A DNA stretch of 64,000 nt, taken from the IMG/VR virus record IMGVR_UViG_3300042340_000379, positions 62,001 through 126,000 of that record; one strand, written 5' to 3'. The first letter of the stretch is position 1; every line of letters starts with the position of its first letter. Below are positions 31,236 to 54,698 of the stretch, one piece after another. A program made the position numbers and the translations under genes. The notes below the pieces were generated by a model. That model was not told the origin of the DNA, made no database searches, and saw only the letters and a program-made list of their open reading frames with translations.

Positions 31236-31259
31236 TGTCCTTCTTAAGCTATTATTGAT

Positions 31260-32692: not shown

Positions 32693-32696
32693 TCAA

Positions 32697-32769
32697 GCCG
32701 TGTTAGCTCAGTTGGTAGAGCAGTTGGCCTGTACCCAACGTGTCGCGGGTTCGAGCCCTGCATACGGCT
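32697..32769 (+). tRNA. tRNA-Thr(UGU), no encoded CCA
   Basis: Full cloverleaf: GCCGTGT/ATACGGC, GCTC/GAGC, GTTGG-CCTGTAC-CCAAC, GCGGG-TTCGAGC-CCTGC. Confidence 0.9.
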
Positions 32770-32839
32770 TTAACAATCAATAAGAAAATATGAATATCAC
32801 AATACGGCACTGCCTGCGATCTGTAGAAGAAAGAATCAT

Positions 32840-39700: not shown

Positions 39701-39996
39701 GAAGAATGGAATAATAAGCTATTTGCTCCATTTTCTTTGAATAGGATTAAAGCACTCGGACTACCCGTTGGAACTGTAAATGTTGCGACTGGGGTGGGTG
39801 TTCCGCTTGCCACAGTGTCGGGATTGATTTCATGTAGCTCGATAGCAGCGGCTGAAGTCGAACAAGTATAGATTTGGAGCCGGGTCGAGCTTATTTTATT
39901 TAATTGGCAATAAGATGAATTATTGGCCAGCGTTAAAGTTGCGTTAATGTTGGCCAGAGGCAATGTAGCTGGTTGCCGTTTTGTTTGTAGCGCCAT
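36742..39996 (-). CDS. Tail fibre/receptor-binding-like mosaic protein
   Basis: 1084 aa, T/S/G/A-rich; repeated FNP.TV.GT beta units; helical C-terminus with duplicated AAL..YD.PT.AEL. Confidence 0.6.
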   Translation of the reverse strand: MALQTKRQPATLPLANINATLTLANNSSYCQLNKISSTRLQIYTCSTSAAAIELHEINPDTVASGTPTPVATFTVPTGSPSALILFKENGANSLLFHSSGNSTDTITIFRFNPSTVSGTVASTATITGMGTIRGLQAHLNGANSYLFSTDTANNRVDMLEFSATGITSANTRASLLRATFAGTGGMTICSYHHLSATVGYLAALNFAFVRFWRFNPSTISTTGTVHTASFSFNTGSPLAAIDMAVDGANSYIAAMMLDLSDSLQKFVFRTFNPDTVLGTVSYAPSAIVRSGTQNFGFTNFNITKISSTRHVLIASLPAPSVVGGLILNPQSFSTLNEFLSFEYVSTGTVNHALLDEAGDLSTVVAVNRAGIPAISIWKGALTRILDNRNTISALTFGDSSPIRKTGSGPIVLGNSSIDDFSFFRYLISGRGVLSTGTTTTTFNYQITISEDTVVTFDGEDFEMSGASSAIIGNYRINIASGRFCRLSSKGTYADSVTVKSGAELKITANTILTSEFVLESGVTVTGSGFTLTIPYPDPGLVLGTGVTLSAPVIAYTSTSLVDGTRLYLAHQQSFLVASAAVNTGTDTITLGNDSNSRPPAFATGSPYTNVKIQATAGATLPTTSPQIVDGGRYYATISAGAITLFIKEADIPATPITISTTGTNASGSIFTLITETQKHNAVVSGGSGASVVLTLANGDRVIRKAIYWDNPGGIATATPLYIQDFLWSATAGINDPVVVNPAIELNLVHEDIVASTSVQLGGRIKNASGTVVTELTAANDGSTLDASNGGPYSFGLEGGGGRVQVNASDADGLSLWQDLYIWGVWVSSTAPGIRLINADTSIAITASNFVFANFEIDNTSSTRLNIVGGNATSADGSSLVAPTQTGTGGINPNALSLGTLLTFESGTSGLTAGEAEDLADLAATLQTTGVFSTAALANAPSGGGGGLTAQQVRDALKLAPTAGSPAAGSVDADLDTLVARNNALDSTATQAAAAAALNAYDPPTRAELTSDIGTVTGAIAGLNNLSTAQVNAEVDAALADYDGPTKAELDSAVAGLATSSALINELSEVKTIATAAKNAAVAGL

Positions 39997-40286: not shown

Positions 40287-43200
40287 TTAAACCAAAAGAG
40301 CAACAAAAGATGGATCTGCAGTATTACTAGCCGCTACTCGGTTGCTAGCATGGAAATGATCCGATGCAGACTGTTGTTGTTTAATTGAGATTCTGTTTGA
40401 TTGGGCGTCATAAGAAACTACATGTTCAGTATTTTGAGAAGCTGAAGGCCTTGGATTAGGATTTGAGGGTTGTCTACTTGAAACTTGTTGAACAGAAACA
40501 GTTCCGCGAACAGGCTGAACTTCAGGAGCTTTAACTTCTTGTGGAGTATAAGTTTGAACTGCAGCTCCAACTGTCATTGGTAATTCTTGTGCTCGTTGTC
40601 TCGCTTGAGTTTCACGCACTCTTACTCTTTGAGCCCCTCTTCTAAATAGATCCAATCCAAGAGTTAGGCCAGGAATAAACGTAGAAGCTAAAGCCCGCGC
40701 TGACTGATTAAACAAGTTAAACGCCCGCTTGAAAAACCCTGGCTTCTCTTTTGTGTAAGAAGAGGGGGATCGGTTAGCTACTTGGTCGATATAGCTTTCA
40801 GCATTTGTGTTATCACCAACCAGCCGCTGCTGGATAGATCCTCCCAAAAGTCGGTCAACAGCTTCTCGAGCATCCCTAAGAAGTCGGTCTGGGTGAGATT
40901 TGTAATAGCTAGCTGTTCCTAAAACTGAGCCTAATTTCCGACCTCCATAATTTGCCAGGTCAGAACCAAGAGTGTCAATAGTAACGCCAAGCGCAATCAT
41001 GCCAAGACCAAGGCCCGCACCTACACCAGTTGCCGTTACAGCCGCTCCCGTTGCGTAAAGACTTTTAGCTAAAATTGACATGGGAAGCGTAGCCGCTAAT
41101 CGAAACGCACCCCCAACTGCTTGAGAATAAGCCAGTTGATGCTGCTCTTTTGAAGAGCCATAATTAAGAGAAAAAGCTTTCTTTAAACCAGAGAACACAT
41201 CATAAGCCCCGATGCCATATTCAACAACATCAAAAATCCTCCCAGCAAACCAAGCCCCACTCTTAGCCACCTTAGTCGCACTAATAGCTTTTGTTGTATT
41301 CGCAGTCCAGCTAGCCGCGCCAATGCCTAACCGCCCTAAAGCTCGACCTCCTCGTCCAACCCCTCGGGCTACTCTACTTGATTGCTCAGCCTGTCGAGCT
41401 GCTTGAAGAGAAAGATGGAGTCCAGACTTAGCTGCTTGCTGCACAGCTTGATTTGAATTAACCGCTCCAGCTCGAAGCGCTTCGTACAGGCGAGCAGTTT
41501 TTGTATTCCGGCTAGCAACTGACTGAGTATAAGAACTCATCATATTAAACAGATCGTCGGTCTGATTTAACATCCCAGATTCTCGGGCGTAGCTCATTGA
41601 CCTAGACATTCTGGAAAACTCAGCATTCTGGGCATAATTTACTAAGGGCTCGAGATTACCAGATGCTCTACCTGCTTTAGCCAAAGAGAGAAGTTGGGGA
41701 GCATGTCGAATTAATCGAGAAGTCTTAAGGCTAAAGAGAGTGTTAGACACAGCCCCCACAACTAGATCTGTTTCAGTAGCTCTTCCCTTAGCCATAAATT
41801 CAGCTCGCCGCTCAGACCTAGCTGCTATTAGTGGGGCAAGTCCAATAGAAGCGAGCACACCTACAAGATCATTCTTAAACGCCGCTGTTATACCAAAGGC
41901 CGCTATTGTTTGAAGAGCTGAAGAGTATGTTGATTTAACATATCGTTCGCGAGTACCGCCAGAGAAATTATCGGCTCCCATTAATAACCGCATGTTATTA
42001 GCCATTCCTACGCCAAGAACGCCGTAACTACCAACTCTAAACGCTCCAGAAAGAACTCCCCCTCTGCGCATAGCGTAATCAAGCGCTTTGTGGCGAACTC
42101 CCCCAGTCACCGCGCCTCTAAATAGTTGAGCAAATATTTTGGTGTGCATAGCTTGAGCAGGTTTAGCTAAATACGCTAGCCCTATACCAACCGCAGCTCC
42201 TACATAAGCCCCTTTAGAATCATCATCATCAAGGCTATTTCCAATAAGATGACCCACCATAGCGCCAATGCCAGCCATTCCTATATAACGGTTAAAAACT
42301 CGGAAAGAACTTCTTACCTGATTTCGAGCACCGTATTGAGTTGCGGCAGAAATTCCCCCAGCAATAGCCGCACCTGCTACTCCAGTAACAGAAATCCCAT
42401 CATTTTCTCTACTAGAGAAACGATCACCTATTAGATAACCTAAAGCTCCAAAACCTCCAGTAAATCCAGCCTGAGATAGAGGGGCTAACAGTGAAGACAA
42501 TCGCTTAGCCTGAGACATGTAAGCAGCCCCAGCAAAAGCAGCGACGGTCGCGCCGACCATTACATTAATGTTTCCCTCAAACAATTTGTTGTAAGCGGCT
42601 ACTGAGAGGCCAGCCGCAATTGCTGCCATAGCTGCTGCCGTTCCCAGTTTGAAGCCTTTAGCCAGATTGATAGTAAGAGAACGCTGCTTAGCTAGCTTCT
42701 GAAAAATTCCTGAAGACTTAACCCGATTAAGTAAACCTGAAAACCGGCTTTGTCTAGCTATATGACCAGAAGCTATAAGCTCAATCGCAGTATGGCGAAT
42801 AGACCCGCTATAAACTAAAGCAGCGGTCGCAGCACCCCCGGCCCCCGCCAGTAAAAAACTCTTTTCGTCATCATTTTGTAAGTAGTAAAGTGCAGCCATA
42901 GACAAAGCGCCCGCGACTAGTGATCGCCCACCTCCTGACCTAAAAATTCCCCCTTCTAGGTAGCGTTCATACTCAAAAGCCGCGACTGAGTTTATAACGT
43001 TTTGTAGAGAACGGGTTGCTTGACGCACACCCTTAAACCCAAACTTATGCTTGACCGCGTAAGTGATAAGATTATCAACCGTTCCGCTTAGCTGGGGTAA
43101 AAGTAGATGAGCCTTTTTCTGAGCTAATGAGAGAATCTGGGTTTTGTATAAACCTGAGGCACCCCCAAGTGCTAAACCTAAAACAGTTCCGTACACTCCA

Positions 43201-46200
43201 AAAGTAGAACCAAACTGCGCTCCAATAGCCGCTCCAACAAAACTTGAAGCAGTAAGTGTGGTAGGAGAGCGGTACTTAAGAATTTGAGAAGCACTTAAAG
43301 CGCCAGTCACACCAAACGCGATGTTAGTAAGCTTTTGAGTACTACGGTCGTCCGGACTAGACGCAATTAAACCTAAAGCTGCACCACCCAAAGCTATAGA
43401 GAACACTTTCCGATTCATTAGCCCAAGCTTAATCCGACCTTTAAGATCAGGACGGGTTACAGCCAAAACGTTGCCAGTCGGATTTGTTAGATTTCCTCTA
43501 TATGTCGAGATTGAGGAAGCTTGAGACATGTAACCCGATCGCGCCATGGGAGGAAGAATTGCTATACCAGCTCCAATAGAACCCCCTAACATAATGCCAA
43601 AAGTGTTTCTATCATCGCGGCCCCCATCTCGGGTATAGCCATAACCAAAAGCGTGTCTGGCAAGAATAGAGCCAGCTAAAAACCCGGCTCCTGCTCGTGC
43701 GCCATACTTAGCTGTCTGCTTAGCAAGATACACACCGGGTTTTTCAATCCCTTGCTTGCCAAGATGCTCAGCTACTCTAGTTTTTAACCCTAAAACAACA
43801 CCCTTAACTTTAGGCAGGGTTCTTTGAATATCATCGTTAAGAGCAGGCGCTGCCATCCGAAGCGTGAACTCAGTCGAAACACCCGGCATAATAATACCGT
43901 CAGCCGATGCGTCTCTCATCACCTCGCTAATGTAGTCGTTACCTCGCCCGGTGATGTCAAGACCTAAAAACTGCCCACCAAAACCGATCGCGTATAGAAG
44001 TGCTTTACTCCCTGCTGCTAGGCCTGCCATAGAGCCAATAAAAGAGAGCATTGCGCCCTGGTTTTGACTCACATTAGTTTGAGCAATCTCAACAGCTCGT
44101 GAAACCCGACCTCCAGTTGGTCGGGGATCTAGCATGTACTGATAAAAGTCAGCTCGGTTACGATATGTAGCGAACAAGTTTAGAGCTGGATCAGCGATGC
44201 TCATTACATCCGCCGCGCCCAAACGACTACCAGAGTACAACTTTGCAGCTGGTAAAACACCCTCTGCCTGTTTAACCAGAGCCCCTCCTTGAGAAGCTTC
44301 ATAGTTGTTCTTTGTTTGAAGAAGCTCAGCTTCTAACTCAAGACGCTTATTGTAAGAAAGGTCGGGGTTTAGAAGCTCAGCTTCTATTCGGGTCTTTATA
44401 TTTTCAGACCGCGCCATTTCCTGATTAATCAAATCAAGCTCATCAGCTTTGATGGTATACGAGCGACTCGAAATATCAGGATTATTTAGGTGCTTAATGA
44501 GACCCTGGTAAACATCAACGTTAGCGTTAACGTCAGCCATAGCAGTGTGAGCGTTTTGCAGTGGCTCTCCCGCGATTGCCTCATAAATAGAGCCAAGGTT
44601 GGAGCGAGCAGCACCTAATTCTCTATACCGCTTGGGGTCAATATCATTAAGCGTGTCAATATAGCGGCCTTGAGTTACTGCTTTATCCAGTTTTTTAACC
44701 AAGTCATGCCGACCCAGCCGGTGCATTGTCGCTTGGAGAACTGGAATGTCAAACTTAGAAATGTTGTGGCCAGCTAGAACAGCACCATCAAGCTGACCCA
44801 TTAATTCTTCAAGAACATCTCCTGCTGCCTTACCTTTAGCCAGATCATCTAAGTTAAACTTACCCCCGGTCATTTCACTGGGGTCATAGTAGGGCTGCAC
44901 AAGATAACGATTCTCAGAAAGACTTTGAACCCGCCCAGTTTGAGTGTCTATAGTAATTTTTCGGTAGGCTACTTCCGCAATAGGAGGGCGCGATCCTGGA
45001 TCAGTCTCAGAAAGATCTGTTCGAGCTGAGTAGGATGTTTCAAGGTCAAAGAATAAAAGATTTTGATAGCGGGGTAAGTCTTTGATTGTTTTTAGCTTTG
45101 GCGGATCAGCATGATTTACTAGCTTGTCAATTGGAGTGTTAGTTCTAGACTTTACTGACTGGAGGTCAGGATTCATTACTGAAGTAAACTCAGCGCGATC
45201 AAAATCTCGAATACCATCGCTGCTCTTACTTTGAGAAGATCGTTTGGCTGATTTGCTTTGGTCTTTACGCCCAATCGTCCGCTTAATAGGGTCCTCAGAA
45301 CCACTGGATAAATCGTGGATGCTCTGAACCATGTGACCCGATTCAAACGAGAACGTTCCATCGTGATAAGTAGCCCCCTGCATAAGGCGGTCGAAAATAG
45401 GATGGGTGTTATCTAACTGGATAGCATTAGCACCAAGCTTGTCTAAGTTCCCTTGGAATAGACCAGTCTTAGTGTTCTGATATCCTTCAAATCGGCCCCT
45501 ACTCTGCCGATCATCTATAGTTTGGACAATACGGCTAGCGCGGGAAACACCGTACTTGTTACGCTGCTTGATAAATGCGCGAGAGTTAGCCTCAAACTCC
45601 TGCTCATAAATTTGCTGATAACCAATATGGTCGAGATTTTGATTGTTAGCTAATGCCCCTTGAGCTGAGCGTTGAGCCAACCTATCAATAGATGTAATAA
45701 CGTCAGAAGATGCGCCTGCTTGAGTCAAGAGCTTCTGATTGCCAAGAAGATCCCGACTCGCCGTAAAGCCTGGGCGATTAAATTCCTTAAGATGCTTTCT
45801 AGCCTGGCGAACGTGCATCTTCTCGTGAAGAAGCTCAAATTCAGCCATCTGGTAGCGCATCGAGTTACGGGGAGACTTGAGCCTCGCCTGCAAACTCTCG
45901 CTCATATCGATTCGAGGATTCCCGTTACCATCAAACGACACCTCACTTCTGGAGAGGTTAGCAATCATTCGAGAACGAATAGTCGAGTAAACCGAGAGGC
46001 TTGAAGCGATAATCGCGGAGGCGTAGAGTTTATTGCGGCTATCCTTATATTCATGGACATCATATTGAGCCATCCGGTAGCCCATGCGGTCGCCTATCGC
46101 AAAACCCATGACACCTAAAGCGACAACCGACAAAAGCGATCGCCCTTGAAGCGCACCAATAGAACTGGCGATAGCGCTGAACGAAGAACCCAAAGATTCT

Positions 46201-49200
46201 CTATAAGCCGCAGCGACATTCTCACCCGTCTGCCGGTCAGGCTGACTCTCCATTACTCGGCGGGTCGCGCCAAACATAGAGTACATATCAATAAAAGCTG
46301 GGCCCATGTCTTTAAGAACAGTGCCTGTCTGGCGCAAGTTTCTCCCCATACGAGAAGAAGTCTTACGTAAGCGCATAGCCAAAATCTGACCGTCAGTTAA
46401 AGCAGGGCCAACAGCAGAAGGGGCTGGAGGCAGCAAACCAAAAGGGGTAAACTCTTTAACAGGCTGCAAAAGTCCAAACGGAGTAAAAGCCGCTGGGGCA
46501 TAACCAGGGCTAACAGGTGTCTGGATTTGAGGGACGTTCTTAATCGCGTCGTAGATTTTACCCACTCCGCCCGCCGCTTCATTAATAACAGTGGATGAAA
46601 TAAATGATGAGGCAGTAGAGACACCCAAGAATGCAGCCGTTGCAAGTTTCTGCATTTCAAACAGAGTCTGGCTAGCGACAGGTTCAAAAAACCGCCCGAC
46701 CTGTTGAATAGGTAATAGCACTCCTGGCCGATGAGTAACGTAACGAAGGTTCCTCATCCCTCGGGAAAAGCCTCTCCGCGCAATTCTCGTCTGAACTTTA
46801 AAGCTCGGAATGGTCACATCAGGAAAAATAACTTGCACGTTAGGCAAGTGCATCCCAAACTTAGGTCGCCGCATTAGCATTTGGCGTCTAAATAACTGAC
46901 CGGGATTAGCAGCTTGAAGATTCTTTGCTCCCTTTACATACCCAGAAATGTCGGCAAACTCTTCTCTTAGTTGAGGGAGAATACTGCTGTTCAGTTGCCG
47001 AGCCATTTTTGAAGTGGAAGCATAGGCAGACATTAAGCCTAAAGCTACCCGATTATCTTCAGCAGGCGCAGGCCGACGCATCATTGCACCATATATTGCG
47101 TAATTACCCATGTCCTGACGCCGCTCAAGAGCCATTCTCATCGTCGGACTTAAACGATTCATGCTTGAGATAGAAAAGCTCGAGATAATAGAAGGCATAA
47201 TTCTCTCTCGAGAATTAAAGTAGCGCTCACTGTAGTAGTTGTCTAAAAATCCATAAGCAGAACCACGCACGTTTGCTTGAACCGGAATCTCTCCACCCAC
47301 AGACATAAAACTAGATAAGCCCCGACTCATCTTGTTTCTGTGGTAGATGTCCTGGTTATAAACAAACGGCTCTGAGCCTGTAAACGTTTTTTGGGCTTCT
47401 TTATAAATCTGCTGTTTGTATAGAGATTGGGGTAAAAGAATGCTAGTAGCAATCGCCATCGCCATACTACGGGAGCCCTTAGCATAAGTCTCACCAATCT
47501 TTTCTCCCATAGGCTCAAAGATTGTACCAACTAAAGCATCTCCTAATGGGCCGGTTGCTTTGCTGACTAGGCTGCTAACACCTGAGACTAAGCCAGCTGC
47601 AAAAGATGTAAATCCACGCTCGACAGAAACAATACCTTGGGCTAATCTAGAATTTTTAAAAGACTCAAAGTTGACGGACATGATTGCACCCGCCAAGAGC
47701 ATAGCTGGTAAATTAGCCTTTCCACTAAATAAAACCTTTGAGATAACCCGCTCAAGACCATAGGCAAGACCTAGCTGACTAGACGCTCGAACTAACTGAA
47801 GAGATGCCTGGTCGCGGAGACGATCTTCACTTGATAGTAAGTAAGCAGATGATTCAGCAAGAGTATAAACATCCTGACCGTAGGAAGCATAAAATGCAGT
47901 AACTCTACCTGCTCCCATTACAGCGTTCATCACATCTTCCGTGATAGGTCGAACAGTTGGAGCACCTCTAACAGTCTCAAAGACTTTCTCGACTTTTACA
48001 TTGTTTGTGGTGTCTATCTCACCTAGTCGCATCATATGTTGCTCAAAAGCCTGAGCTTCAAGCTGAGCCCGCCGAATGTTTAGGCGAGACAGCCTATCTC
48101 CAGATGAGAGGCGTCTATTATTCTTGAGCGTATTAGCATAGTCTTCCAGCTCACCATAAGACTCAGGGGCAATCATCGCCTCAAGCTTTTGGGTAAAATC
48201 GCCAGTGTAAAGCACTTCATAGCGCTTTGGATTTAACCCCATTGTTTCTTCTAACAAAGGCTCTTGCATAAACGCATAAATCTTCTGCTGAAAATCTGAT
48301 GCAAGATTACTTTTAACATCCCGGCCCTCTAGCAAATCCTGCATGTACGGAGACATAGAACCAATATGGTCAGCTACCGTGCGCGTTAAAGTACCATAGG
48401 TTTTCATAACCTGATACCAATATGCTCTTTGAGTAAGCTGCATGCCCTCAGGCATAGCAATCTTATAAGCCGCTGTAATAACCTCTTTGTCTTTAGAAAA
48501 GAGCTGGGCGACAGCTTTAGTGTCAGATTTATGAGTATCAAACCGCCCGCTTCGAGCTACTCTATAGAAATCTCGAACAACATCCTTAAGCGCGTCGTTT
48601 CTAAGCCCTATACTCTCACCTAAAAACGCTCGTTCCATCCCACCCGTAACCGTAGCTAATGCAATACCCGTTGAAGCTAAAGTACCAATCGATAAGGCTG
48701 TAGAAATAGAACCAAGCAAAGCGGTTGAACCAGCGGTCTGCCCCTGGTCGCTATAGGCTTTATTTATCCCCCCGATTTGAGTAAAGAAACCGGATTTAGC
48801 AGTGTAATAATGTTGAGATGTAATATTAACTATCAAATCATCTAGGGTTTCGCGGCTCCCTCTTGCTGTGTAAGTTCCCTGAAAAGCGCTGGCTAAGTCA
48901 ATAGATAAAGCCTGAAGTGGGTCATATCCTTGATAGGGAACTTTTCCTAGAGATGTTGAAGTACGCCCTAGAAGAATACCTTCCTTAAGTTGGTCAATCG
49001 CAAGCTCACTTGCCCGCTGCATAGAAATCCAGCGCATGGTAAATTCGCGTCGGGCAAATGCAGTTTGAAGAGTAGAGCTAGTCAGCGCTCGCTGCTCATA
49101 CATTGTTATACCGTCAACCCGCATCTTTTTGCGACGAGAGACAGCGCCTCTATACATCGCAAGAATTTCTTCTGCAGCAGCAGGACTTTCATCAAGCCTA

Positions 49201-52200
49201 TTCATGTTGTAATCAAGAACAGCTGAAAGTTGCTGCATCGCTTCTTTTGACATTTCATAGTTAAACATCCCGTAAGATGCATAAGAAATGTCAGAAGTTG
49301 GAGAGGCTATTTGAGAATAAAACCGAACTTGGGAGTTGGTTTGATCCATTGATGCCCCAGTTGGATAGAGCAACGGCGTAAATAGGTTTGGCGTATCTAC
49401 ATAAAGACCCGTAAGCTTTTCGAGATTCACCCCCGTTAGCTTCTTAATCAAAGAAGATGTAGTTTGAAAGACGGCTCGAAGGGGATTGCCACGCTGCTCA
49501 GCATATTGAGTAGGGTCTGGGCCAGCTAGTCTTAGTGCGGGTAGAAGTTTGTACAATCCTTCAAGACCAGCTTGGCCAAACATTTCTCCTGCAAGACGGG
49601 TGCCCAAAGTAGCTGTAAGACCAGCCGTTACTAGCAACGTGCCCGCAAGTTTCATCCGAGCTGACGAACGACGAAAAAGATTAGTCGAAGAAGCAATCGC
49701 TTGCTGTTGTTCTAAAAGTCCGGGTACAAGCTCAAGTACTTTTTGACTAGGCCCTCTTAGTCTAATCTGAGAAGCAACGTCGCCCGCGCTGGAGTAAACA
49801 CCAGACTGCATTCCAAGATAACCAACATATCCCAACTGCGCAGCCGCAAGCCCGCGCTGAAACGGGTTCTCAAATGCTTCATGACTTCCTGGGCCAGTAT
49901 CAGGATCTGTCAAAGCCAGACTTGCCATCGCGGTTAGATAAAAAGGGAGAGCTCTACCTACACCTTTAGGAATGTTAAATGAGCTATTCAGCTTTTGAGC
50001 AATTCCAGTTCCTTGAATAAATGCTTTACCACCGGCCATCATTGCTTGGGGAACAGCGACTGAGAAGCCAGTCATAATCCCGGTCATCGATTCAATAGTT
50101 CTAAAACCCGTTCCCAAAACCTTCATCATAGGAGAAAGGTACTTTGATTCTCTCTGGGCTAGATTTGAAAGGTTATAAAGCATAGACCCAGGGCGAGAGC
50201 CTTTCATAGCTGCTTGGGTACGCTGAATAGTTCCCCTAGCTAGAGTTGCGGCACCTAAGAATCCAAGCGCTGCTTCTACCTGGCTTCCTTCTGAGTACAC
50301 AAAAGAATTAAAAAAGGCTAGCCCAGCTGCTTGATTTAATAGCTGCTCACCTGTGCCAAGTACTGTCCCTAATGGGCCGTTAGGGTTTATTCCAGAATTA
50401 GCTAAGGTTTGGTTCAGATAGTTGTTTTTTTCGTTAGCTCTTAAACGCAGTGCAATAGGTAGAGTAGGGTTTACACCCATACCTAGCATAGGCAGCAACT
50501 GCATACCAAACGAGAGAGTTGTCTGGTTGCTAGTTGGGTCAGTGCGCAGCAAGGTAGCAAACTGAACAAAGCCTAAGTTTGTCTGCTGAGCAATCGAGTA
50601 AACATTCATTCCAATCGCGGCGGTTGGATCACCTGATTGAAGCTCTTTTAGAACATGCCCTAGCACCCCTCTAGTCGCAACAGAAGAGGGGGTAATATCA
50701 GCAAGCAATCCTTGGCCGGTTGTATATCGAGTTTTGTTTAGGGTTGCTTTAATCAGGCCAGCGACTGATTCAGTCTCAGAGTCTAGCTCACGTCCTGGTT
50801 GCCGATTATGAATATTGTTTAGAAGCGCAGAGACCGCAACGTAAGCAACTTTTGCTGACACCAAACCCATAACCGCGCCGACCGCAGCTGACCTCATGTT
50901 AAACTTAGCCTTAACAGAGACAATGTCTTTAGTAAGCTGCTGAGCTTGGTCAAGTGATCGGGATAAAGCTTTAAGACCAGAAGATTGAGTAGCGACTCTA
51001 TACGTCCGAAGATGGTCACCCATGTGGTAAAGCATCTTACCGACCGTGCTGTTCTCCAGTCGGGTCTTAGCAAAATAGGGGAAGAGACTACCAGTCGCCA
51101 AACCTGCAACACCTGCTACTCCTAAAGCAGTAGCCGCAGGCATCGCCCCGTTAAATTTGAAGGCCATCACTTGGCCTTCATCATTACGGACAGCATCAAA
51201 GAGCTTCATTTGAGAATGGAGTGAAGCGCCTTGAGTCCTTAAAATAAATTGGTCAAAAAGATAATCAGCGCCAAGAACACCCCCGACAACCAGAAGCGTT
51301 CTGATATTCTTTTTGAATCGAGATGATCTAGCCGTAATAATTTGGTCAGCGTCTTGGCCTAGGTTATAACCTACATAGCTGCTGGCCTGAGTGTTCATCA
51401 ACTTTGTTTGCTGAACAAGACTCGACCCTGCCATCGCGTTGGAAGTAGAAACCATTGTCTCTAGCAGTTGGGTTGTGTCCCTCAAAACTTGAGGCCGGGA
51501 AGAAGAGTAATCAGCTTTAATGCCGCGAATGTTGTCTCTAAGAGATTTTGTGTACTGCTGCTCTAATTGAACTAAAGAGCGTGAGTCTTCAAAAAGCTTC
51601 ATAGCTGCACGGTAAGACTGGATAGGCTGCTTAATTATGTTTGCGGTAACCCTGGCCGTCACATCAAATTTAATCAGCATATTCTGCATGAGGTTATCGC
51701 CAAACACCTCAGCAATCGAATTGTCGTCAGCCGTCGTTACGCCCATCCACTGCCGCATACTCGGAATCCAGTAGATAGGATTTGAGGGTACTGCCCGCGC
51801 AATCTTATCTACTTCTTGGGCCAAGTCTTGAACTCGACTACGCCCAAAATTAACCAGACCATCTTCTCGTACAGAAACAGGTTGCTTAATTCTCTTGGCA
51901 AGGTTGGTAAGCGCCTCATTAGCGCCAGCTCTATCGGCAGCAGGTACGACAATATCAATCATCGAGCCACCAATAGTCCGAACAATCTCTGATTCGTATC
52001 GTCTTAAAGAGTTGATAAATCCAAGAGGAGTTCCAATGTCAGCATGCTTTGTAGCAATCCTGACGCTTAATTTGTCGGGATCGTTAAGTGTAACTTGATG
52101 CGCCCGCTTGAGAATCTCAGCGGCTCCAACATTCTCTCCTGTTCCAACAAGCTGATCTTTAACATAGTCAATTGCAGCATCCATCTGCCGAGACTCAGGC

Positions 52201-53492
52201 GTGGAAAATACACCTCGAAATATATTCTGAAGAGGAGTTCTCTGCTGAGTTGTCTGGCTAGAAAGGTAAGCAAGACCCTCCTCTTGGATAGCCATAATAC
52301 CAAGTTGAGAAGCAAACGACGCTCCATATCCAACAATTGCAACCGCAATTCCTTTTGCTGCATCAGTAGAAGCGCCCAGCATCTTCTCGATAGGGCCCGC
52401 TTCTAGAGAATTGTCTCTATACTGAGTACGGTGAAATGCAAGTGGTGTGCCCTCAAGCCGCCCTTCACGCACCATCTTCTCGTACTGAAAAGCATGAAAG
52501 CCTGTCACATTGTCTAGAAAACGCCCAGCTGAACGAGCTGCCGAACCTAGAATGCCGTAACCTTCATGGTAAAACTTAAACCCAAGAGCCCGATTAATTT
52601 GGTGCCCCAAAGAAGGAGTTCCGATCTCCCGATCAGCGGTAATAACGGCGGTAGGTGCTGTCTGAGATGTAAACATCTCATAGGTCGCTGTGGTAGATCT
52701 ATACATGGGTAGAGATCTACCAATATATCGGTCAAAGAAAGATTCCTTTAATTGAGTCGGCATGTAGGGTAAAGAAACTCCCTGCCCTAGTCTATCTTGA
52801 GATAAAGAGTCTACCTGACTATAAGTCGTCTTGCGAAGAGACCCAAACTCGCCTAAATCATAAGAGTTAAGAACGGGAGGCTTAGGAGGACTTGGCTTTA
52901 ATGCCTTTGATTTTTGCTTCTGATAATTTAGTTGCTTCTTAGCCTGAAGAATCTCCTGAGGATCTCCACCCTCCCGTGCTTTCTTCAAATTCTGCTTAGC
53001 AGAATCTAAATACATTACACGCTGACGAAAATCACTGGGCGTTTCACCCAGACCATAAACAGCCCCTCCCTGCTTATACGCTTTGAGAGCTGCCTTAGAA
53101 TAAGCATCAGCTTTATTCCGGTCTGAAAATATAGTTTGGGAAGGGATGTGAGCAAGCCCTGCTTCAACAATCCGAAGGTTTACAGAACCCTGAGCGTTAT
53201 GTATTTCACCAAGAGTTCGTCCGTATTGGTCAGTTCCTTGAGACTCAATCTGAGCTTGGCTTCCAATAGGAGCCAAGCTTCTAGCATAGTCTGTGGCCCT
53301 ATCTCCGTAACGCTGCCCTTTTGTTCCCCTACCATGGGAAGTTTCAGGCGCATCAATATAAGAGAGACGAACTGTGCGCTTCTCTCCAAACTTATCTTGA
53401 ACAACAAAAGTGTCAGCATCTTCAATCCCAACAACAGTCCCTGACATGTCAGGACGATTATGGCTGCTGAGTCTATTGACAAACGAGTCCAT
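40287..53492 (-). CDS. 4401-aa giant virion-module protein: thermonuclease + DEDDh exonuclease + Gly/Ala-rich hydrophobic tracts
   Basis: SNase motifs DADT, VRL..IDAPET, DQYGRTL, EAGLA; DEDDh motifs FDLET, GHNI.KFD, HTAMAD at about 44490-45065. Confidence 0.85.
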   Translation of the reverse strand: MDSFVNRLSSHNRPDMSGTVVGIEDADTFVVQDKFGEKRTVRLSYIDAPETSHGRGTKGQRYGDRATDYARSLAPIGSQAQIESQGTDQYGRTLGEIHNAQGSVNLRIVEAGLAHIPSQTIFSDRNKADAYSKAALKAYKQGGAVYGLGETPSDFRQRVMYLDSAKQNLKKAREGGDPQEILQAKKQLNYQKQKSKALKPSPPKPPVLNSYDLGEFGSLRKTTYSQVDSLSQDRLGQGVSLPYMPTQLKESFFDRYIGRSLPMYRSTTATYEMFTSQTAPTAVITADREIGTPSLGHQINRALGFKFYHEGYGILGSAARSAGRFLDNVTGFHAFQYEKMVREGRLEGTPLAFHRTQYRDNSLEAGPIEKMLGASTDAAKGIAVAIVGYGASFASQLGIMAIQEEGLAYLSSQTTQQRTPLQNIFRGVFSTPESRQMDAAIDYVKDQLVGTGENVGAAEILKRAHQVTLNDPDKLSVRIATKHADIGTPLGFINSLRRYESEIVRTIGGSMIDIVVPAADRAGANEALTNLAKRIKQPVSVREDGLVNFGRSRVQDLAQEVDKIARAVPSNPIYWIPSMRQWMGVTTADDNSIAEVFGDNLMQNMLIKFDVTARVTANIIKQPIQSYRAAMKLFEDSRSLVQLEQQYTKSLRDNIRGIKADYSSSRPQVLRDTTQLLETMVSTSNAMAGSSLVQQTKLMNTQASSYVGYNLGQDADQIITARSSRFKKNIRTLLVVGGVLGADYLFDQFILRTQGASLHSQMKLFDAVRNDEGQVMAFKFNGAMPAATALGVAGVAGLATGSLFPYFAKTRLENSTVGKMLYHMGDHLRTYRVATQSSGLKALSRSLDQAQQLTKDIVSVKAKFNMRSAAVGAVMGLVSAKVAYVAVSALLNNIHNRQPGRELDSETESVAGLIKATLNKTRYTTGQGLLADITPSSVATRGVLGHVLKELQSGDPTAAIGMNVYSIAQQTNLGFVQFATLLRTDPTSNQTTLSFGMQLLPMLGMGVNPTLPIALRLRANEKNNYLNQTLANSGINPNGPLGTVLGTGEQLLNQAAGLAFFNSFVYSEGSQVEAALGFLGAATLARGTIQRTQAAMKGSRPGSMLYNLSNLAQRESKYLSPMMKVLGTGFRTIESMTGIMTGFSVAVPQAMMAGGKAFIQGTGIAQKLNSSFNIPKGVGRALPFYLTAMASLALTDPDTGPGSHEAFENPFQRGLAAAQLGYVGYLGMQSGVYSSAGDVASQIRLRGPSQKVLELVPGLLEQQQAIASSTNLFRRSSARMKLAGTLLVTAGLTATLGTRLAGEMFGQAGLEGLYKLLPALRLAGPDPTQYAEQRGNPLRAVFQTTSSLIKKLTGVNLEKLTGLYVDTPNLFTPLLYPTGASMDQTNSQVRFYSQIASPTSDISYASYGMFNYEMSKEAMQQLSAVLDYNMNRLDESPAAAEEILAMYRGAVSRRKKMRVDGITMYEQRALTSSTLQTAFARREFTMRWISMQRASELAIDQLKEGILLGRTSTSLGKVPYQGYDPLQALSIDLASAFQGTYTARGSRETLDDLIVNITSQHYYTAKSGFFTQIGGINKAYSDQGQTAGSTALLGSISTALSIGTLASTGIALATVTGGMERAFLGESIGLRNDALKDVVRDFYRVARSGRFDTHKSDTKAVAQLFSKDKEVITAAYKIAMPEGMQLTQRAYWYQVMKTYGTLTRTVADHIGSMSPYMQDLLEGRDVKSNLASDFQQKIYAFMQEPLLEETMGLNPKRYEVLYTGDFTQKLEAMIAPESYGELEDYANTLKNNRRLSSGDRLSRLNIRRAQLEAQAFEQHMMRLGEIDTTNNVKVEKVFETVRGAPTVRPITEDVMNAVMGAGRVTAFYASYGQDVYTLAESSAYLLSSEDRLRDQASLQLVRASSQLGLAYGLERVISKVLFSGKANLPAMLLAGAIMSVNFESFKNSRLAQGIVSVERGFTSFAAGLVSGVSSLVSKATGPLGDALVGTIFEPMGEKIGETYAKGSRSMAMAIATSILLPQSLYKQQIYKEAQKTFTGSEPFVYNQDIYHRNKMSRGLSSFMSVGGEIPVQANVRGSAYGFLDNYYSERYFNSRERIMPSIISSFSISSMNRLSPTMRMALERRQDMGNYAIYGAMMRRPAPAEDNRVALGLMSAYASTSKMARQLNSSILPQLREEFADISGYVKGAKNLQAANPGQLFRRQMLMRRPKFGMHLPNVQVIFPDVTIPSFKVQTRIARRGFSRGMRNLRYVTHRPGVLLPIQQVGRFFEPVASQTLFEMQKLATAAFLGVSTASSFISSTVINEAAGGVGKIYDAIKNVPQIQTPVSPGYAPAAFTPFGLLQPVKEFTPFGLLPPAPSAVGPALTDGQILAMRLRKTSSRMGRNLRQTGTVLKDMGPAFIDMYSMFGATRRVMESQPDRQTGENVAAAYRESLGSSFSAIASSIGALQGRSLLSVVALGVMGFAIGDRMGYRMAQYDVHEYKDSRNKLYASAIIASSLSVYSTIRSRMIANLSRSEVSFDGNGNPRIDMSESLQARLKSPRNSMRYQMAEFELLHEKMHVRQARKHLKEFNRPGFTASRDLLGNQKLLTQAGASSDVITSIDRLAQRSAQGALANNQNLDHIGYQQIYEQEFEANSRAFIKQRNKYGVSRASRIVQTIDDRQSRGRFEGYQNTKTGLFQGNLDKLGANAIQLDNTHPIFDRLMQGATYHDGTFSFESGHMVQSIHDLSSGSEDPIKRTIGRKDQSKSAKRSSQSKSSDGIRDFDRAEFTSVMNPDLQSVKSRTNTPIDKLVNHADPPKLKTIKDLPRYQNLLFFDLETSYSARTDLSETDPGSRPPIAEVAYRKITIDTQTGRVQSLSENRYLVQPYYDPSEMTGGKFNLDDLAKGKAAGDVLEELMGQLDGAVLAGHNISKFDIPVLQATMHRLGRHDLVKKLDKAVTQGRYIDTLNDIDPKRYRELGAARSNLGSIYEAIAGEPLQNAHTAMADVNANVDVYQGLIKHLNNPDISSRSYTIKADELDLINQEMARSENIKTRIEAELLNPDLSYNKRLELEAELLQTKNNYEASQGGALVKQAEGVLPAAKLYSGSRLGAADVMSIADPALNLFATYRNRADFYQYMLDPRPTGGRVSRAVEIAQTNVSQNQGAMLSFIGSMAGLAAGSKALLYAIGFGGQFLGLDITGRGNDYISEVMRDASADGIIMPGVSTEFTLRMAAPALNDDIQRTLPKVKGVVLGLKTRVAEHLGKQGIEKPGVYLAKQTAKYGARAGAGFLAGSILARHAFGYGYTRDGGRDDRNTFGIMLGGSIGAGIAILPPMARSGYMSQASSISTYRGNLTNPTGNVLAVTRPDLKGRIKLGLMNRKVFSIALGGAALGLIASSPDDRSTQKLTNIAFGVTGALSASQILKYRSPTTLTASSFVGAAIGAQFGSTFGVYGTVLGLALGGASGLYKTQILSLAQKKAHLLLPQLSGTVDNLITYAVKHKFGFKGVRQATRSLQNVINSVAAFEYERYLEGGIFRSGGGRSLVAGALSMAALYYLQNDDEKSFLLAGAGGAATAALVYSGSIRHTAIELIASGHIARQSRFSGLLNRVKSSGIFQKLAKQRSLTINLAKGFKLGTAAAMAAIAAGLSVAAYNKLFEGNINVMVGATVAAFAGAAYMSQAKRLSSLLAPLSQAGFTGGFGALGYLIGDRFSSRENDGISVTGVAGAAIAGGISAATQYGARNQVRSSFRVFNRYIGMAGIGAMVGHLIGNSLDDDDSKGAYVGAAVGIGLAYLAKPAQAMHTKIFAQLFRGAVTGGVRHKALDYAMRRGGVLSGAFRVGSYGVLGVGMANNMRLLMGADNFSGGTRERYVKSTYSSALQTIAAFGITAAFKNDLVGVLASIGLAPLIAARSERRAEFMAKGRATETDLVVGAVSNTLFSLKTSRLIRHAPQLLSLAKAGRASGNLEPLVNYAQNAEFSRMSRSMSYARESGMLNQTDDLFNMMSSYTQSVASRNTKTARLYEALRAGAVNSNQAVQQAAKSGLHLSLQAARQAEQSSRVARGVGRGGRALGRLGIGAASWTANTTKAISATKVAKSGAWFAGRIFDVVEYGIGAYDVFSGLKKAFSLNYGSSKEQHQLAYSQAVGGAFRLAATLPMSILAKSLYATGAAVTATGVGAGLGLGMIALGVTIDTLGSDLANYGGRKLGSVLGTASYYKSHPDRLLRDAREAVDRLLGGSIQQRLVGDNTNAESYIDQVANRSPSSYTKEKPGFFKRAFNLFNQSARALASTFIPGLTLGLDLFRRGAQRVRVRETQARQRAQELPMTVGAAVQTYTPQEVKAPEVQPVRGTVSVQQVSSRQPSNPNPRPSASQNTEHVVSYDAQSNRISIKQQQSASDHFHASNRVAASNTADPSFVALLV

Positions 53493-53495: not shown

Positions 53496-54044
53496 TTAAT
53501 ACTGGAATCTAGCTAAGCCAGAATTACGTTCAGGAATTTCAATAAGCTGATCAAGAGTAACTGCAGCCGTGTAAGCAATACTAATCTCAGTTCCAACTGG
53601 AGGATTATTTGTAATCCAATTTAATTGATTGCTGAGAATCTCAAAAGTTCCATTCCAACTGGGGTCTAGACTTGAAAAGTAATCATCGGGAAGTGGAATA
53701 GAAGCACCGGATGTAGAGACATGCCAAACAAAATTGCGGGTTCCTTTGCGCTCTGGAACTAGCCACTGCTGACGGTCAATAGGTTGAGGGTTCCCTGGCC
53801 TGTAATAGTTAATTTGATACCGTCCTAATGGAAAGTATCGATCAGAGGGCAAAAGCTTCAAACGCAAATCTTCCCCAACCGTTGCTGTAACTATTACTTT
53901 ATCCTGAATGCTTTGGTATGTCCCTGGTCGATTTCCTCTAGGAAACAGAATCTCTAGAATGTATTCCGTTTCAATAAGCGGATTATCTTCCGCATCCAAA
54001 GCTGGACTCTGGAAGTTAACAAGAATTTCGGTGTACTCAATCAT
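53496..54044 (-). CDS. Hypothetical structural protein
   Basis: Stops 3 nt before the giant gene; beta-rich. Confidence 0.6.
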   Translation of the reverse strand: MIEYTEILVNFQSPALDAEDNPLIETEYILEILFPRGNRPGTYQSIQDKVIVTATVGEDLRLKLLPSDRYFPLGRYQINYYRPGNPQPIDRQQWLVPERKGTRNFVWHVSTSGASIPLPDDYFSSLDPSWNGTFEILSNQLNWITNNPPVGTEISIAYTAAVTLDQLIEIPERNSGLARFQY

Positions 54045-54393: not shown

Positions 54394-54698
54394 AACGTTC
54401 CGCCATTAATAAACGAGCTTCTATAATACTCCGTTCCGTTAGCATTCGATGTCACAAAGCTTGCGTAGGTTGCGTTAGTACTTAAAGGCACCTCCAAAAA
54501 ATCCTCAGCGGCAGTAATTTCTAAATAAGTATCTTCAGCATCTTGGGTTGTTAAAAAATCCTCAATACCTGAGTTTGGTGCATAGTTATCTTTAATAAAA
54601 GACAAGACGGCCCTCACCCGTGCAGGCGTAATAAAGTTCTCAACGTTGTCAGGAAGATTGGTTGTAATTAACGCTTGAAGGTCTTCTGGTTCAGCCAT
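54390..54698 (-). CDS. Hypothetical structural protein
   Basis: NLPDN...ITPA.VR; overlaps the terL stop. Confidence 0.55.
   Translation of the reverse strand: MAEPEDLQALITTNLPDNVENFITPARVRAVLSFIKDNYAPNSGIEDFLTTQDAEDTYLEITAAEDFLEVPLSTNATYASFVTSNANGTEYYRSSFINGGTF

What the first reader, a model, noticed from the sequence alone, without database searches (positions are those of the whole stretch)
40287..53492. Giant 4401-aa virion-module protein with two intact nuclease domains and membrane-like tracts
Seen: an N-terminal staphylococcal-nuclease domain (about residues 17-150) retains its catalytic D, R, D, E and R. A DEDDh 3'-5' exonuclease domain (about residues 2810-3000) retains D-x-E, D and H-x4-D. 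More than 1000 residues of GxxxG/AxxxA hydrophobic helices follow, with similar tracts earlier. The gene lies between terL/baseplate genes and a fibre gene. Known: tape-measure and ejection proteins enter the host envelope; at about 0.15 nm per residue a pure tape measure would imply a roughly 660 nm tail. Inference: an injected, possibly processed polyprotein that forms a conduit and delivers an endonuclease/exonuclease pair (host DNA/RNA degradation, anti-defence or extracellular-DNA clearing). Best candidate here for an undescribed system.
Basis: partly seen in the sequence, partly recalled or inferred. Interest (0 to 1): 0.85.

Follow-up and report, generated by a model that had tools for sequence, protein, structure and literature searches.

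The report
Giant nuclease-tipped phage tail-operon protein
A 4401-residue protein at the end of the tail operon of a ~208-kb cyanophage-like virus belongs to a rare, undescribed family of giant helical proteins that always start with a DNA-cutting enzyme and often end with cell-wall-cutting enzymes, so it is probably shot into the host with the genome, though this is not proven.

Summary
The ORF (40287-53492, minus strand, 4401 aa) is real. It recurs at 97-100% identity in several independent assemblies. The SNase domain (D27, R42, D47, E50, R92) and the DEDDh exonuclease domain (D2816, E2818, D2915, H2982, D2987) are both significant and keep their catalytic residues.

The stated context is partly wrong. 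The 'terL' neighbour is an intein-bearing protein of unknown function, and the 'fibre' is unverified.

An exhaustive profile search found a family of about eight giants (4073-5747 aa) in large myovirus contigs. All are the last gene of the baseplate/fibre operon and follow a conserved ~190-aa partner. All are nearly cysteine-free, strongly basic (+124 to +209) and apparently helical.

The ends are modular:
- The N-terminus is always a non-specific endonuclease, either SNase or an unrelated PLD/Nuc-type fold.
- The DEDDh domain is an insertion found in two members.
- An HExxH motif is conserved in most members.
- Relatives carry cell-wall hydrolases at the C-terminus.

The phage has no tape-measure gene at the canonical tube-hub position.

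Best reading (~0.5): a tail-borne ejection or tape-measure-like protein that delivers nucleases. It is a new variant of a known kind. Virion location and injection remain untested.

The parts
40287..53492 (-). Giant ORF, 4401 aa (alternative start gives 4386 aa); 0 Cys, 6 Trp, net charge about +129
   Evidence: same protein at 97-100% identity in JGI, NCBI, ENA and Logan assemblies
53043..53444 (-). N-terminal staphylococcal-nuclease (SNase) domain, residues ~17-150; catalytic D27, R42, D47, E50, R92 present
   Evidence: Pfam PF00565 E 1e-12; alignment to S. aureus nuclease chains; same residues invariant in the SNase modules of P0008 and L017
45543..52952 (-). Conserved family core, residues ~181-2650; apparently helical, with many invariant Gly/Pro; best conserved at 201-400, 901-1000 and 1301-1400
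   Evidence: collinear BLASTP to P0007-P0011; alignment A2; low-confidence AF2 secondary structure
50817..51296 (-). Two family-conserved hydrophobic segments, residues 733-751 and 869-892 (candidate membrane-inserting helices)
   Evidence: hydropathy of the protein and family-averaged hydropathy
47406..47942 (-). Mosaic or hypervariable patch, residues 1851-2029: ~60 substitutions in an otherwise >=99% identical variant
45597..45836 (-). HExxH module, residues 2553-2632 (H2556, E2557, H2560 invariant in the five aligned members); candidate zincin metallopeptidase
   Evidence: no Pfam match
44403..45224 (-). DEDDh 3'-5' exonuclease domain, residues 2757-3030 (D2816, E2818, D2915, H2982, D2987); an insertion shared only with P0007
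40893..44045 (-). Gly/Ala-rich region with GxxxG enrichment, residues ~3150-4200, apparently helical; TM-like segments at 3616-3634 and 4150-4175
40290..40895 (-). Polar Q/R/S/P-rich C-terminal tail, residues ~4200-4401; the last ~50 residues are loosely conserved across the family
53496..54044 (-). Conserved 182-aa partner, tightly juxtaposed upstream (the giant starts 3 nt after its stop); candidate chaperone or assembly factor
   Evidence: homologues precede the giant in all loci examined (49%, 31% and 25% identity); juxtaposition
54691..57954 (-).
   Evidence: intein-free homologues of 570-583 aa
61780..62838 (-). Baseplate wedge protein (Baseplate_J / gp6-like), same operon
   Evidence: PHROG 6 E 7.5e-43; Pfam weak hit; homologous to Ma-LMM01 gp101
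36742..39996 (-).
   Evidence: no PHROG or Pfam match; relatives have an M15 peptidase or opposite-strand genes here

Best explanation
The gene encodes a member of an undescribed family of giant (4.1-5.7 thousand residue), nearly cysteine-free, strongly basic, apparently helical proteins. The family belongs to a lineage of large contractile-tailed phages that are distantly related, by sheath and tube proteins, to Microcystis phage Ma-LMM01.

Shown:
- The family exists and its position is conserved: last gene of the sheath-tube-hub-wedge-fibre operon, behind a conserved ~190-aa partner.
- The ends are modular. The N-terminus is always a non-specific endonuclease (SNase or PLD/Nuc-type). A DEDDh exonuclease is inserted in two members. 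An HExxH motif is conserved in most members. Relatives carry cell-wall hydrolases at the C-terminus.
- The catalytic residues of both nucleases in this protein are intact.

Inferred:
- The protein is a virion component stored in extended form in the tail lumen, with or without a true length-measuring role.
- After sheath contraction it is expelled ahead of the DNA, C-terminus first. This brings the wall-hydrolase and hydrophobic or Gly-zipper end to the envelope, where it helps to build or line the DNA conduit.
- The N-terminal endonuclease, and here the exonuclease, follow, refold and degrade nucleic acid at or beyond the entry site. Targets could be host or competitor DNA, or extracytoplasmic DNA.
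- The HExxH module may process the polypeptide or cut wall peptides.
For: - Family and collinearity: five representatives were found by an exhaustive HMMER search and are collinear with the giant. Two further members came from contig scans.
- Conserved synteny in four other phage contigs: Baseplate_J-like, a 650-750-aa protein, MJ0330_N protein, ~190-aa partner, then the giant.
- N-terminal endonuclease in every member: SNase or PLDc_2, whose closest solved relative is the endonuclease Nuc, 1byr. Ours and P0007 share the first ~15 residues ahead of different nuclease folds.
- C-terminal wall enzymes in relatives: M23 plus a DD-peptidase/beta-lactamase fold at E 5e-28 in L017, and weak DPBB lytic-transglycosylase matches in P0011 and P0009.
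- Composition: 0 Cys where 23-47 are expected, 6 Trp where 40-72 are expected, and net charge +129. The same pattern holds in all members; the few Cys are mostly confined to the C-terminal add-on modules.
- About 11 hydrophobic segments are conserved across the family.
- No tape-measure gene lies between tube and hub, unlike the solved cyanomyophage A-1(L) (PMC10966104).
- Precedent for SNase inside an ejection protein: the gp16-position 'internal virion protein' of Alteromonas phage H4/4.
- No copies were found in 185,579 bacterial and archaeal species genomes.
Against: - There is no direct evidence of virion location, ejection or processing.
- No tape-measure, ejection-protein or other structural family in Pfam or PHROGs matches the ~4000 non-nuclease residues, even when scanned in pieces.
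- Both AF2 models are low-confidence (pLDDT ~37), so 'all-helical' is weak evidence and no fold comparison was possible.
- The gene lies after the wedge and fibre genes, not between tube and hub.
- The core has many invariant Gly/Pro, which suggests folded domains rather than one long coiled coil.
- If fully extended, 4401 residues would imply a ~660-nm tail.
- This protein and P0007 lack a wall hydrolase in cis.
- A non-specific nuclease travelling next to the phage genome needs an unexplained self-protection mechanism.
- GxxxG enrichment is not a family-wide feature.
Confidence: 0.5

Rival explanations
1. It is the phage's true length-determining tape measure protein, decorated with enzyme modules. 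This is a narrower version of the best explanation. The helical body templates tube assembly, and the modules are cargo.
For: - No tape-measure gene lies at the canonical tube-hub position. The protein there is a hub with lysozyme and M23 domains.
- The composition is tape-measure-like (Cys-free, Trp-poor, Ala/Gly/Met-rich) and apparently helical.
- A conserved small upstream partner could be a chaperone.
- Hydrophobic segments and wall hydrolases lie towards the C-terminus, and the extreme C-terminus is loosely conserved.
Against: - At ~1.5 A per residue (A-1(L): 689 aa for 1045 A), 4401 aa gives ~660 nm unless the chain folds back.
- Length varies between 4073 and 5747 aa within the family.
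- No tape-measure family matches.
- The many invariant Gly/Pro argue for globular parts.
- A 449-aa helix-prone, Cys-poor protein in the tail module remains an alternative tape measure.
Confidence: 0.3
2. It is a capsid-packaged 'polyvalent' or pilot protein, like P1 DarB or N4 vRNAP in principle. It would be stored with the DNA in the head and injected to disarm the host, without any structural tail role.
For: - The strong positive charge (+124 to +209 in all members) suits co-packaging with DNA.
- The multi-enzyme, shuffled architecture and the candidate peptidase motif match the polyvalent-protein concept (PMC5512222).
- The absence of Cys fits translocation in unfolded form.
Against: - The gene is the last gene of the tail/baseplate/fibre operon in every member, not in a head module.
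- C-terminal wall hydrolases fit a protein that meets the cell wall first.
- None of the domain types catalogued for polyvalent proteins, such as methylases, helicases or ARTs, was detected.
- That paper mentions neither SNase nor DnaQ-type domains.
Confidence: 0.15
3. It is an external, baseplate-attached fibre-like scaffold. Its enzymes would clear extracellular DNA and wall or sheath material around the host (for example cyanobacterial mucilage) before or during adsorption.
For: - It follows the wedge and putative fibre genes, including a Gp80-family protein.
- Both N-terminal nuclease types, SNase and Nuc, are archetypally secreted or periplasmic non-specific nucleases (established knowledge of S. 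aureus nuclease and pKM101 Nuc).
- The absence of Cys also suits extracellular proteins.
- A mosaic patch (residues 1851-2029) resembles cassette exchange in host-interaction proteins.
Against: - The apparently all-helical, Gly/Ala-rich, basic composition with conserved hydrophobic segments is unlike known fibres.
- Peptidoglycan hydrolases cannot reach their substrate from outside an outer membrane.
- No carbohydrate-binding or fibre domains were detected.
Confidence: 0.1
4. It is not a virion protein. It would be a late-expressed, membrane-associated intracellular enzyme scaffold for host-DNA breakdown and nucleotide salvage, or for lysis.
For: - The gene abuts the DUF932, XisAC and ribonucleotide-reductase module.
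- One relative's phage has a free-standing SNase next to RNR.
- In another relative an M15 peptidase gene follows the giant.
Against: - Co-orientation and tight juxtaposition with the tail operon.
- Salvage nucleases are normally small early genes.
- There is no reason for ~4000 Cys-free helical residues or for N-terminal module swapping within a conserved frame.
- SNase-type enzymes need Ca2+ at levels above cytoplasmic ones (established knowledge).
Confidence: 0.08

Closest known systems
Phage tape measure proteins with embedded enzyme or membrane-insertion modules (e.g. T5 Pb2, lambda gpH, A-1(L) gp13)
   Same: - Apparently helical, Cys-poor and Gly/Ala-rich, with hydrophobic segments.
- Wall-hydrolase modules in family members.
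- Encoded in the tail operon, with a small conserved upstream partner.
- Expected to leave the tail ahead of the DNA and help it cross the envelope.
   Different: - No sequence match to any tape-measure family.
- Located after the wedge and fibre genes, not between tube and hub.
- Three to seven times longer than typical.
- Carries nucleases, which I found described for no tape measure in the papers searched.
- The core has many invariant Gly/Pro.
T7 gp16-type internal virion (ejectosome) proteins, specifically the gp16-position protein of Alteromonas phage vB_AspP-H4/4
   Same: A very large ejection protein with an SNase-like domain near the N-terminus, next to a wall hydrolase. PHROGs 37474 and 8809 likewise hold ~2100-2300-aa phage proteins with an embedded SNase region.
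   Different: - It belongs to a podovirus core protein family.
- The family profile shows no homology outside the SNase domain.
- The SNase there is only an annotation-level observation. The genome announcement exists, but I did not read it for this point.
Polyvalent proteins of phages and conjugative elements (Iyer et al. 2017, PMC5512222; prototype P1 DarB)
   Same: - Giant multi-domain polypeptides with shuffled effector domains and frequent zincin peptidase modules.
- Proposed to be injected with the DNA for conflict with the host.
   Different: - The described repertoire mentions no SNase, DnaQ-type exonuclease or tape-measure context.
- Here most of the protein is a conserved non-enzymatic helical body, and the gene sits in the tail operon.
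Ma-LMM01 gp080 (3562 aa, hypothetical), the giant ORF of the nearest characterised phage group
   Same: - A giant ORF in a related myovirus (sheath 29% and tube 42% identical).
- A similar odd composition: 1 Cys, 0.4% Trp, Met-rich, Arg much more frequent than Lys.
   Different: - No detectable homology by BLAST, phmmer or the family HMM.
- Acidic (net -91) rather than basic, and not syntenic.
- In a PHROG of unknown function, which it matches end to end, 1-3562 of 3562.

Membership tests
Staphylococcal nuclease (SNase, PF00565) domain | Significant profile match above the curated threshold | tested here: met
   48.9 bits against a cutoff of 21, E 1e-12
Staphylococcal nuclease (SNase, PF00565) domain | Ca2+-binding and catalytic residues equivalent to D21, D40, R35, E43, R87 | tested here: met
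   D27, D47, R42, E50 and R92 align with them. They are also invariant in P0008 and L017.
DEDDh (RNase T / DnaQ-like, PF00929) 3'-5' exonuclease | Profile match, plus Exo I (DxE), Exo II (D) and Exo III (H-x4-D) motifs | tested here: met
   RNase_T at 28.2 bits against a cutoff of 24 when scanned as a piece; PHROG 192 at E 3e-15; D2816/E2818, D2915 and H2982/D2987
Tape measure protein | Sequence membership of a known TMP family (Pfam/PHROG) | tested here: not met
   No TMP family at E <= 0.5-1, in whole-protein or piecewise scans
Tape measure protein | Gene between tail tube (and chaperones) and baseplate hub | tested here: not met
   The gene is the last of the operon, after the wedge and fibre genes. 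The tube is followed directly by the hub.
Tape measure protein | Protein length proportional to tail length (~1.5 A per residue) | not testable with these tools
   No isolate or micrograph exists. The phage is known only from metagenome contigs.
Tape measure protein | Predominantly alpha-helical, Cys-poor body with hydrophobic or Gly-rich segments and frequent wall-hydrolase modules | tested here: inconclusive
   Composition and family modules fit. The helical prediction rests on low-confidence AF2 models.
Tape measure protein | No other tape measure encoded by the phage | tested here: inconclusive
   None lies at the canonical site. The 449-aa and 923-aa tail-module proteins are unassigned. 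Only ~85 of the contig's 208 kb was inspected.
Polyvalent proteins (Iyer et al. 2017) | Several distinct effector domains in one polypeptide, with variable architecture among homologues | tested here: met
   SNase or PLD; with or without DEDDh; with or without M23, DD-peptidase or DPBB
Polyvalent proteins (Iyer et al. 2017) | Delivered into the recipient cell together with the DNA | not testable with these tools
   Requires virion proteomics or injection assays
Polyvalent proteins (Iyer et al. 2017) | Contains the domain types catalogued for the class | tested here: not met
   No methylase, helicase, ART or similar domain was detected. The paper mentions neither SNase nor DnaQ. The HExxH module is unclassified.
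T7 gp16-like internal virion protein | Homology to the gp16-type body | tested here: not met
   The family HMM finds nothing in the Alteromonas phage gp14-16 region. Only the SNase domain is shared.
Zincin metallopeptidase (HExxH) | HExxH motif conserved across homologues | tested here: met
   H2556, E2557 and H2560 are invariant in five aligned members. P0008 has an intact second copy, and L017 lacks the motif.
Zincin metallopeptidase (HExxH) | Recognisable zincin fold or family, and a third zinc ligand | tested here: inconclusive
   No Pfam or PDB match for the region. No usable structure model.

The most novel reading that the evidence does not exclude
These phages have merged tape measure, membrane conduit and effector delivery into one giant polypeptide. 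It would be a tail-lumen protein that carries interchangeable 'warheads': an endonuclease at the DNA-proximal end and wall hydrolases at the tip end. On this reading a contractile-tailed phage injects a non-specific nuclease effector with its genome, much as secretion systems deliver nuclease toxins. The phage's own DNA would have to be protected, by modification or by spatial or ionic control of the enzyme.
Probability: 0.3. Interest if true: 0.85.

Novelty: new variant of a known kind. Interest (0 to 1): 0.68.

Why it matters
If the protein is ejected, it would be the first family of contractile-tail phage proteins shown to carry nuclease cargo into the cell.

The strongest argument that nuclease activity itself is selected at that position is the replacement of the N-terminal nuclease by an unrelated fold (SNase versus PLD/Nuc) within a conserved frame.

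It would bear on three questions:
- How phages fight at the entry site, which is the mirror image of host membrane nucleases that attack incoming DNA beside the tape measure (bioRxiv 10.1101/2025.11.03.685801).
- How a phage shields its own genome from a non-specific nuclease.
- How far tape-measure-like proteins can be loaded with cargo.

It also gives about 4000 residues of conserved 'dark' sequence a testable context. Finally, it points to the unexplained giant ORFs of the Ma-LMM01 group of bloom-associated cyanophages.

Tried and rejected
- Word-indexed homologue searches, with the whole protein and with the family alignment, returned only the protein itself. They are unsuited to relatives at 24-43% identity.
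- Megablast, blastn and tblastn against deposited phages found nothing apart from weak matches to the two nuclease domains.
- Piecewise Pfam and PHROG scans of the non-nuclease ~4000 residues gave nothing significant. A weak Reprolysin hit (E 0.11) was rejected because the first His of the motif is missing.
- Two single-sequence AF2 models came out at pLDDT ~37. Even the nuclease control domains were poorly modelled, so no fold search was run.
- The family profile against PDB sequences hit only the PLD module (Nuc, 1byr).
- Homology of the family to Ma-LMM01 gp080 or to the T7 gp16-like protein was rejected.
- No prophage copies were found in bacterial genomes.
- The 'terL neighbour' was rejected: all its matches are inteins.
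- The '1024-aa protein is the tape measure' idea was rejected: it is a hub with lysozyme and M23 domains.
- RNA-polymerase-like (DxDxD) and Walker A motifs are absent.
- Internal repeats are absent in a self-BLAST.
- P0008 (5747 aa) exceeded the tools' length limits. Its C-terminal wall-hydrolase-like motifs were seen only by eye and are not claimed.
Full report
**1. The observation**

The window holds one uninterrupted ORF at 40287-53492 on the minus strand, 4401 aa. Its ATG lies 3 nt after the stop of the upstream 182-aa ORF. The same protein, whole or as fragments, occurs at 97-100% identity in JGI, NCBI, ENA and Logan assemblies. It is therefore not an assembly artefact.

The window is positions 62001-126000 of a 207,855-bp viral contig, JGI 3300042340, also held as IMGVR_UViG_3300042340_000379.

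*SNase domain.* The match is significant: PF00565 at E 1e-12. In the alignment with staphylococcal nuclease chains, D27, R42, D47, E50 and R92 fall on D21, R35, D40, E43 and R87.

*DEDDh domain.* It is also significant:
- PHROG 192 at E 3e-15.
- RNase_T at 28.2 bits against a cutoff of 24.
- ~26% identity to DnaQ-like genes of Flavobacterium phages.
- Exo I D2816/E2818, Exo II D2915 and Exo III H2982/D2987 are present.

*'Membrane-like' tracts.* These are only partly borne out. Residues ~3150-4200 are 25-35% Gly+Ala, and GxxxG occurs 66 times against 40 +/- 6 in composition-preserving shuffles. However, only four segments in the whole protein pass a TM-like hydropathy threshold.

**2. The context was partly misread**

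The 1087-aa neighbour taken for terL matches a 'terminase' PHROG only through an intein. Its Pfam hits are Intein_splicing, LAGLIDADG_3 and MJ0330_N. Every PDB match is an intein. Relatives carry an intein-free version of 570-583 aa.

The downstream 1084-aa 'fibre' has no family match and is not conserved at that place.

Walking the contig gave the real operon, in order of transcription:
- sheath (1175 aa, PF17482);
- tube (245 aa);
- a 1024-aa protein;
- seven small opposite-strand genes;
- proteins of 923, 449, 386, 178 and 160 aa;
- Baseplate_J (352 aa);
- a 716-aa protein, then 127 aa, a Gp80-family protein (144 aa) and 266 aa;
- the intein-bearing protein, then 102 aa and 182 aa;
- the giant.

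The nearest characterised phages are the Microcystis myoviruses of the Ma-LMM01 group and a Microcoleus phage. The sheath is ~29% identical and the tube 42%. A cyanobacterial host is therefore likely but not shown.

**3. The protein itself**

It has no cysteine. About 47 would be expected from all window proteins, or 23 from structural proteins only (P ~ 7e-11). It has 6 Trp where 40-72 would be expected, is enriched in Ala, Gly, Met, Arg and Gln, and has a net charge of about +129.

Outside the two nuclease domains nothing matches Pfam, PHROGs or PDB sequences, even in 600-residue pieces at permissive thresholds. There are no internal repeats, no DxDxD motif and no Walker A motif, and there is a single HExxH at 2556.

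Two single-sequence AF2 models (residues 1-1200 and 2757-3956) are low-confidence, with pLDDT ~37. I use them only for the weak statement that everything outside the nuclease domains is predicted as helices of 15-45 residues with no strands.

**4. A family**

The exhaustive HMMER search with residues 1501-2700 found five representatives, all giants: P0007 (4477 aa, 43%), P0008 (5747 aa), P0009 (4352 aa), P0010 (4147 aa) and P0011 (4365 aa), the last four at 26-28% identity. They match at equivalent positions.

BLASTP shows collinearity over residues 208-4382 with P0007 (40% identity) and over about 181-2650 with the others. Profile-guided contig scans added L017 (4073 aa) and L018 (4179 aa). 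None was found in 185,579 bacterial and archaeal species genomes.

All members have 0-3 Cys, and these are mostly confined to the C-terminal add-on modules. Their net charge is +124 to +209.

In the four other loci examined the giant is again the last gene of the baseplate operon. The order is Baseplate_J-like, a 650-750-aa protein, the MJ0330_N protein, a ~190-aa protein homologous to our 182-aa ORF (49%, 31% and 25% identity), then the giant.

**5. Modular ends**

*N-terminus.* It is an SNase in ours, P0008 and L017, with the catalytic residues invariant. It is a PLD-like domain in P0007, P0009, P0010, P0011 and L018 (E values down to 3e-14), with the H-x-K and GSxN motifs invariant.

The family profile's only PDB hit is Nuc (1byr), the PLD-superfamily endonuclease. 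Ours and P0007 share the first ~15 residues ahead of different nuclease folds. The module was therefore replaced in place.

Two unrelated non-specific endonuclease folds at the same position is the best evidence that endonuclease activity is what is selected there. From established knowledge, both archetypes, S. aureus nuclease and pKM101 Nuc, are secreted or periplasmic enzymes. SNase is also a Cys-free protein that refolds spontaneously and needs Ca2+ well above cytoplasmic levels.

*DEDDh domain.* It is an insertion shared only by ours and P0007 (RNase_T at 33.9 bits in P0007). The region is about 50% gaps in the PLD-type relatives.

*HExxH.* H2556, E2557 and H2560 are invariant in the five aligned members. 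P0008 has a degenerate copy at the syntenic place plus an intact second copy. L017 lacks the motif.

*C-terminus.*
- L017 carries Peptidase_M23 (E 1e-5) and a DD-peptidase/beta-lactamase fold (E 5e-28).
- P0011 and P0009 have DPBB lytic-transglycosylase matches below the curated cutoff (E 4e-6 and 1e-3).
- Ours and P0007 have none in cis. In P0007's phage an M15 peptidase gene follows the giant.
- The last ~50 residues are loosely conserved beyond these variable modules.

*Hydrophobic segments.* About 11 are conserved along the family. GxxxG enrichment is significant only in ours (z 4.9) and L017 (z 3.7).

**6. Tape measure or not**

The 1024-aa protein at the canonical position is a hub, not a tape measure:
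- lambda-lysozyme-like, E 8e-23;
- lysostaphin/M23-like;
- a match at E 2e-8 to the solved hub of Anabaena myophage A-1(L), 8kea;
- 11 Cys and 12 Trp.

In A-1(L) the tape measure gp13 (689 aa for a 1045-A tail) lies between tube and hub (PMC10966104). Here no ORF of 40 aa or more lies on the coding strand between them. The tape measure is therefore unassigned.

The giant is compositionally the best candidate. A 449-aa helix-prone, Cys-poor protein remains possible, and only ~85 kb of the contig was inspected.

Against a simple tape measure: the gene position, the length (~660 nm if extended), the length variation within the family, the many invariant Gly/Pro in the core, and the lack of any tape-measure family match.

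**7. Mechanism proposed**

Shown: the family, its synteny, its modularity, intact catalytic motifs and its composition.

Inferred: the protein is a tail-borne component kept extended in the tube lumen. The lumen of known tubes is electronegative, which would suit a basic cargo (general knowledge). After contraction the protein leaves C-terminus first, as tape measures do. The tip end carries the wall hydrolases (in relatives) and the hydrophobic or Gly-zipper segments that would insert into membranes. The N-terminal endonuclease, and here the exonuclease, follow, just ahead of the DNA, and refold.

Whether they act in the periplasm or outside the cell, or in the cytoplasm, is open. The Ca2+ dependence of SNase and the periplasmic nature of Nuc favour the former. 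A Mg2+-dependent DEDDh enzyme favours the latter. How the phage genome escapes a neighbouring non-specific nuclease is unexplained.

An SNase-like domain inside the gp16-position 'internal virion protein' of Alteromonas podovirus H4/4 is an annotation-level precedent, as are PHROGs 37474 and 8809.

**8. Comparison and novelty**

Functionally the closest concepts are tape measure or ejection proteins with enzyme modules, and the 'polyvalent proteins' of Iyer et al. 2017. That catalogue mentions neither SNase, DnaQ-type exonucleases nor tape measures. The papers found by my searches describe no nuclease-bearing tape measure or tail ejection protein.

Membership of any known tape-measure, gp16-like or polyvalent family is not supported by sequence.

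I rate it a new variant of a known kind. The giant family is undescribed and rare, with five 50%-identity clusters among 1.84 billion representatives plus two more from contigs. The nuclease-swap pattern is striking. The key functional claims still need experiments.

Noticed in passing
window 47406-47942 (-), residues 1851-2029 of the giant: An ENA variant is >=99% identical elsewhere but carries ~60 mostly conservative substitutions in this ~180-residue patch. It looks like a recombined cassette or a hotspot of diversification.
   Followed up: partly
giant, around residues 1611-1619 (window ~48636-48662): In the 15,255-bp ENA contig the gene is called as two ORFs (1611 aa and 2783 aa). That implies a stop, a frameshift or an assembly error at this point in that sample.
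   Followed up: no
window 54691-57954 (-): An MJ0330_N-family tail-operon protein is interrupted by a ~500-aa intein with a LAGLIDADG homing endonuclease. Relatives have intein-free versions of 570-583 aa, and one has an intein remnant next to an HNH gene (L013).
   Followed up: partly
window 32696-34075 (+): tRNA-Thr (UGU) at 32696-32770 lies directly upstream of an IS605 OrfB/TnpB-type gene (32900-34075, Cas12f-like TNB domain) inside the phage genome.
   Followed up: no
window 29633-32651 (+): An XisA/XisC-type recombinase (447 aa) and a DUF932 protein (463 aa) flank the end of the tail operon. The same pair sits beside the giant gene in all related contigs.
   Followed up: no
L008 7701-18389 (Ma-LMM01 gp080, NC_008562 57700-68388): The reference Microcystis phage has its own 3562-aa hypothetical protein with 1 Cys, 0.4% Trp and high Met, but net charge -91. 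It has no detectable homology to this family and is not syntenic. It may be an analogous giant virion protein.
   Followed up: partly
L013 31734-32282 (-) and L014 22006-22791 (-): The phage encoding P0009, whose giant has a PLD-type N-terminus, carries a free-standing SNase gene next to ribonucleotide reductase.
   Followed up: no
L006 10297-13371 (-) (contig beyond the window's high end): The baseplate hub (1024 aa) combines M23/lysostaphin-like and lambda-lysozyme-like domains, like the dual-hydrolase hub of Anabaena phage A-1(L). In Ma-LMM01 the homologous parts are split over gp093 and gp095.
   Followed up: partly
L005 8402-10303 (+) (between hub and the 885/923-aa gene): Seven small genes (39-155 aa) on the opposite strand interrupt the tail operon.
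   Followed up: no
window 1-24000 (+): A replication and nucleotide-metabolism block: helicase, thymidylate-synthase-family enzyme, primase, exonuclease and class I/II-type ribonucleotide reductase. The ThyA-like enzyme could relate to DNA modification, which bears on self-protection from the nucleases.
   Followed up: no
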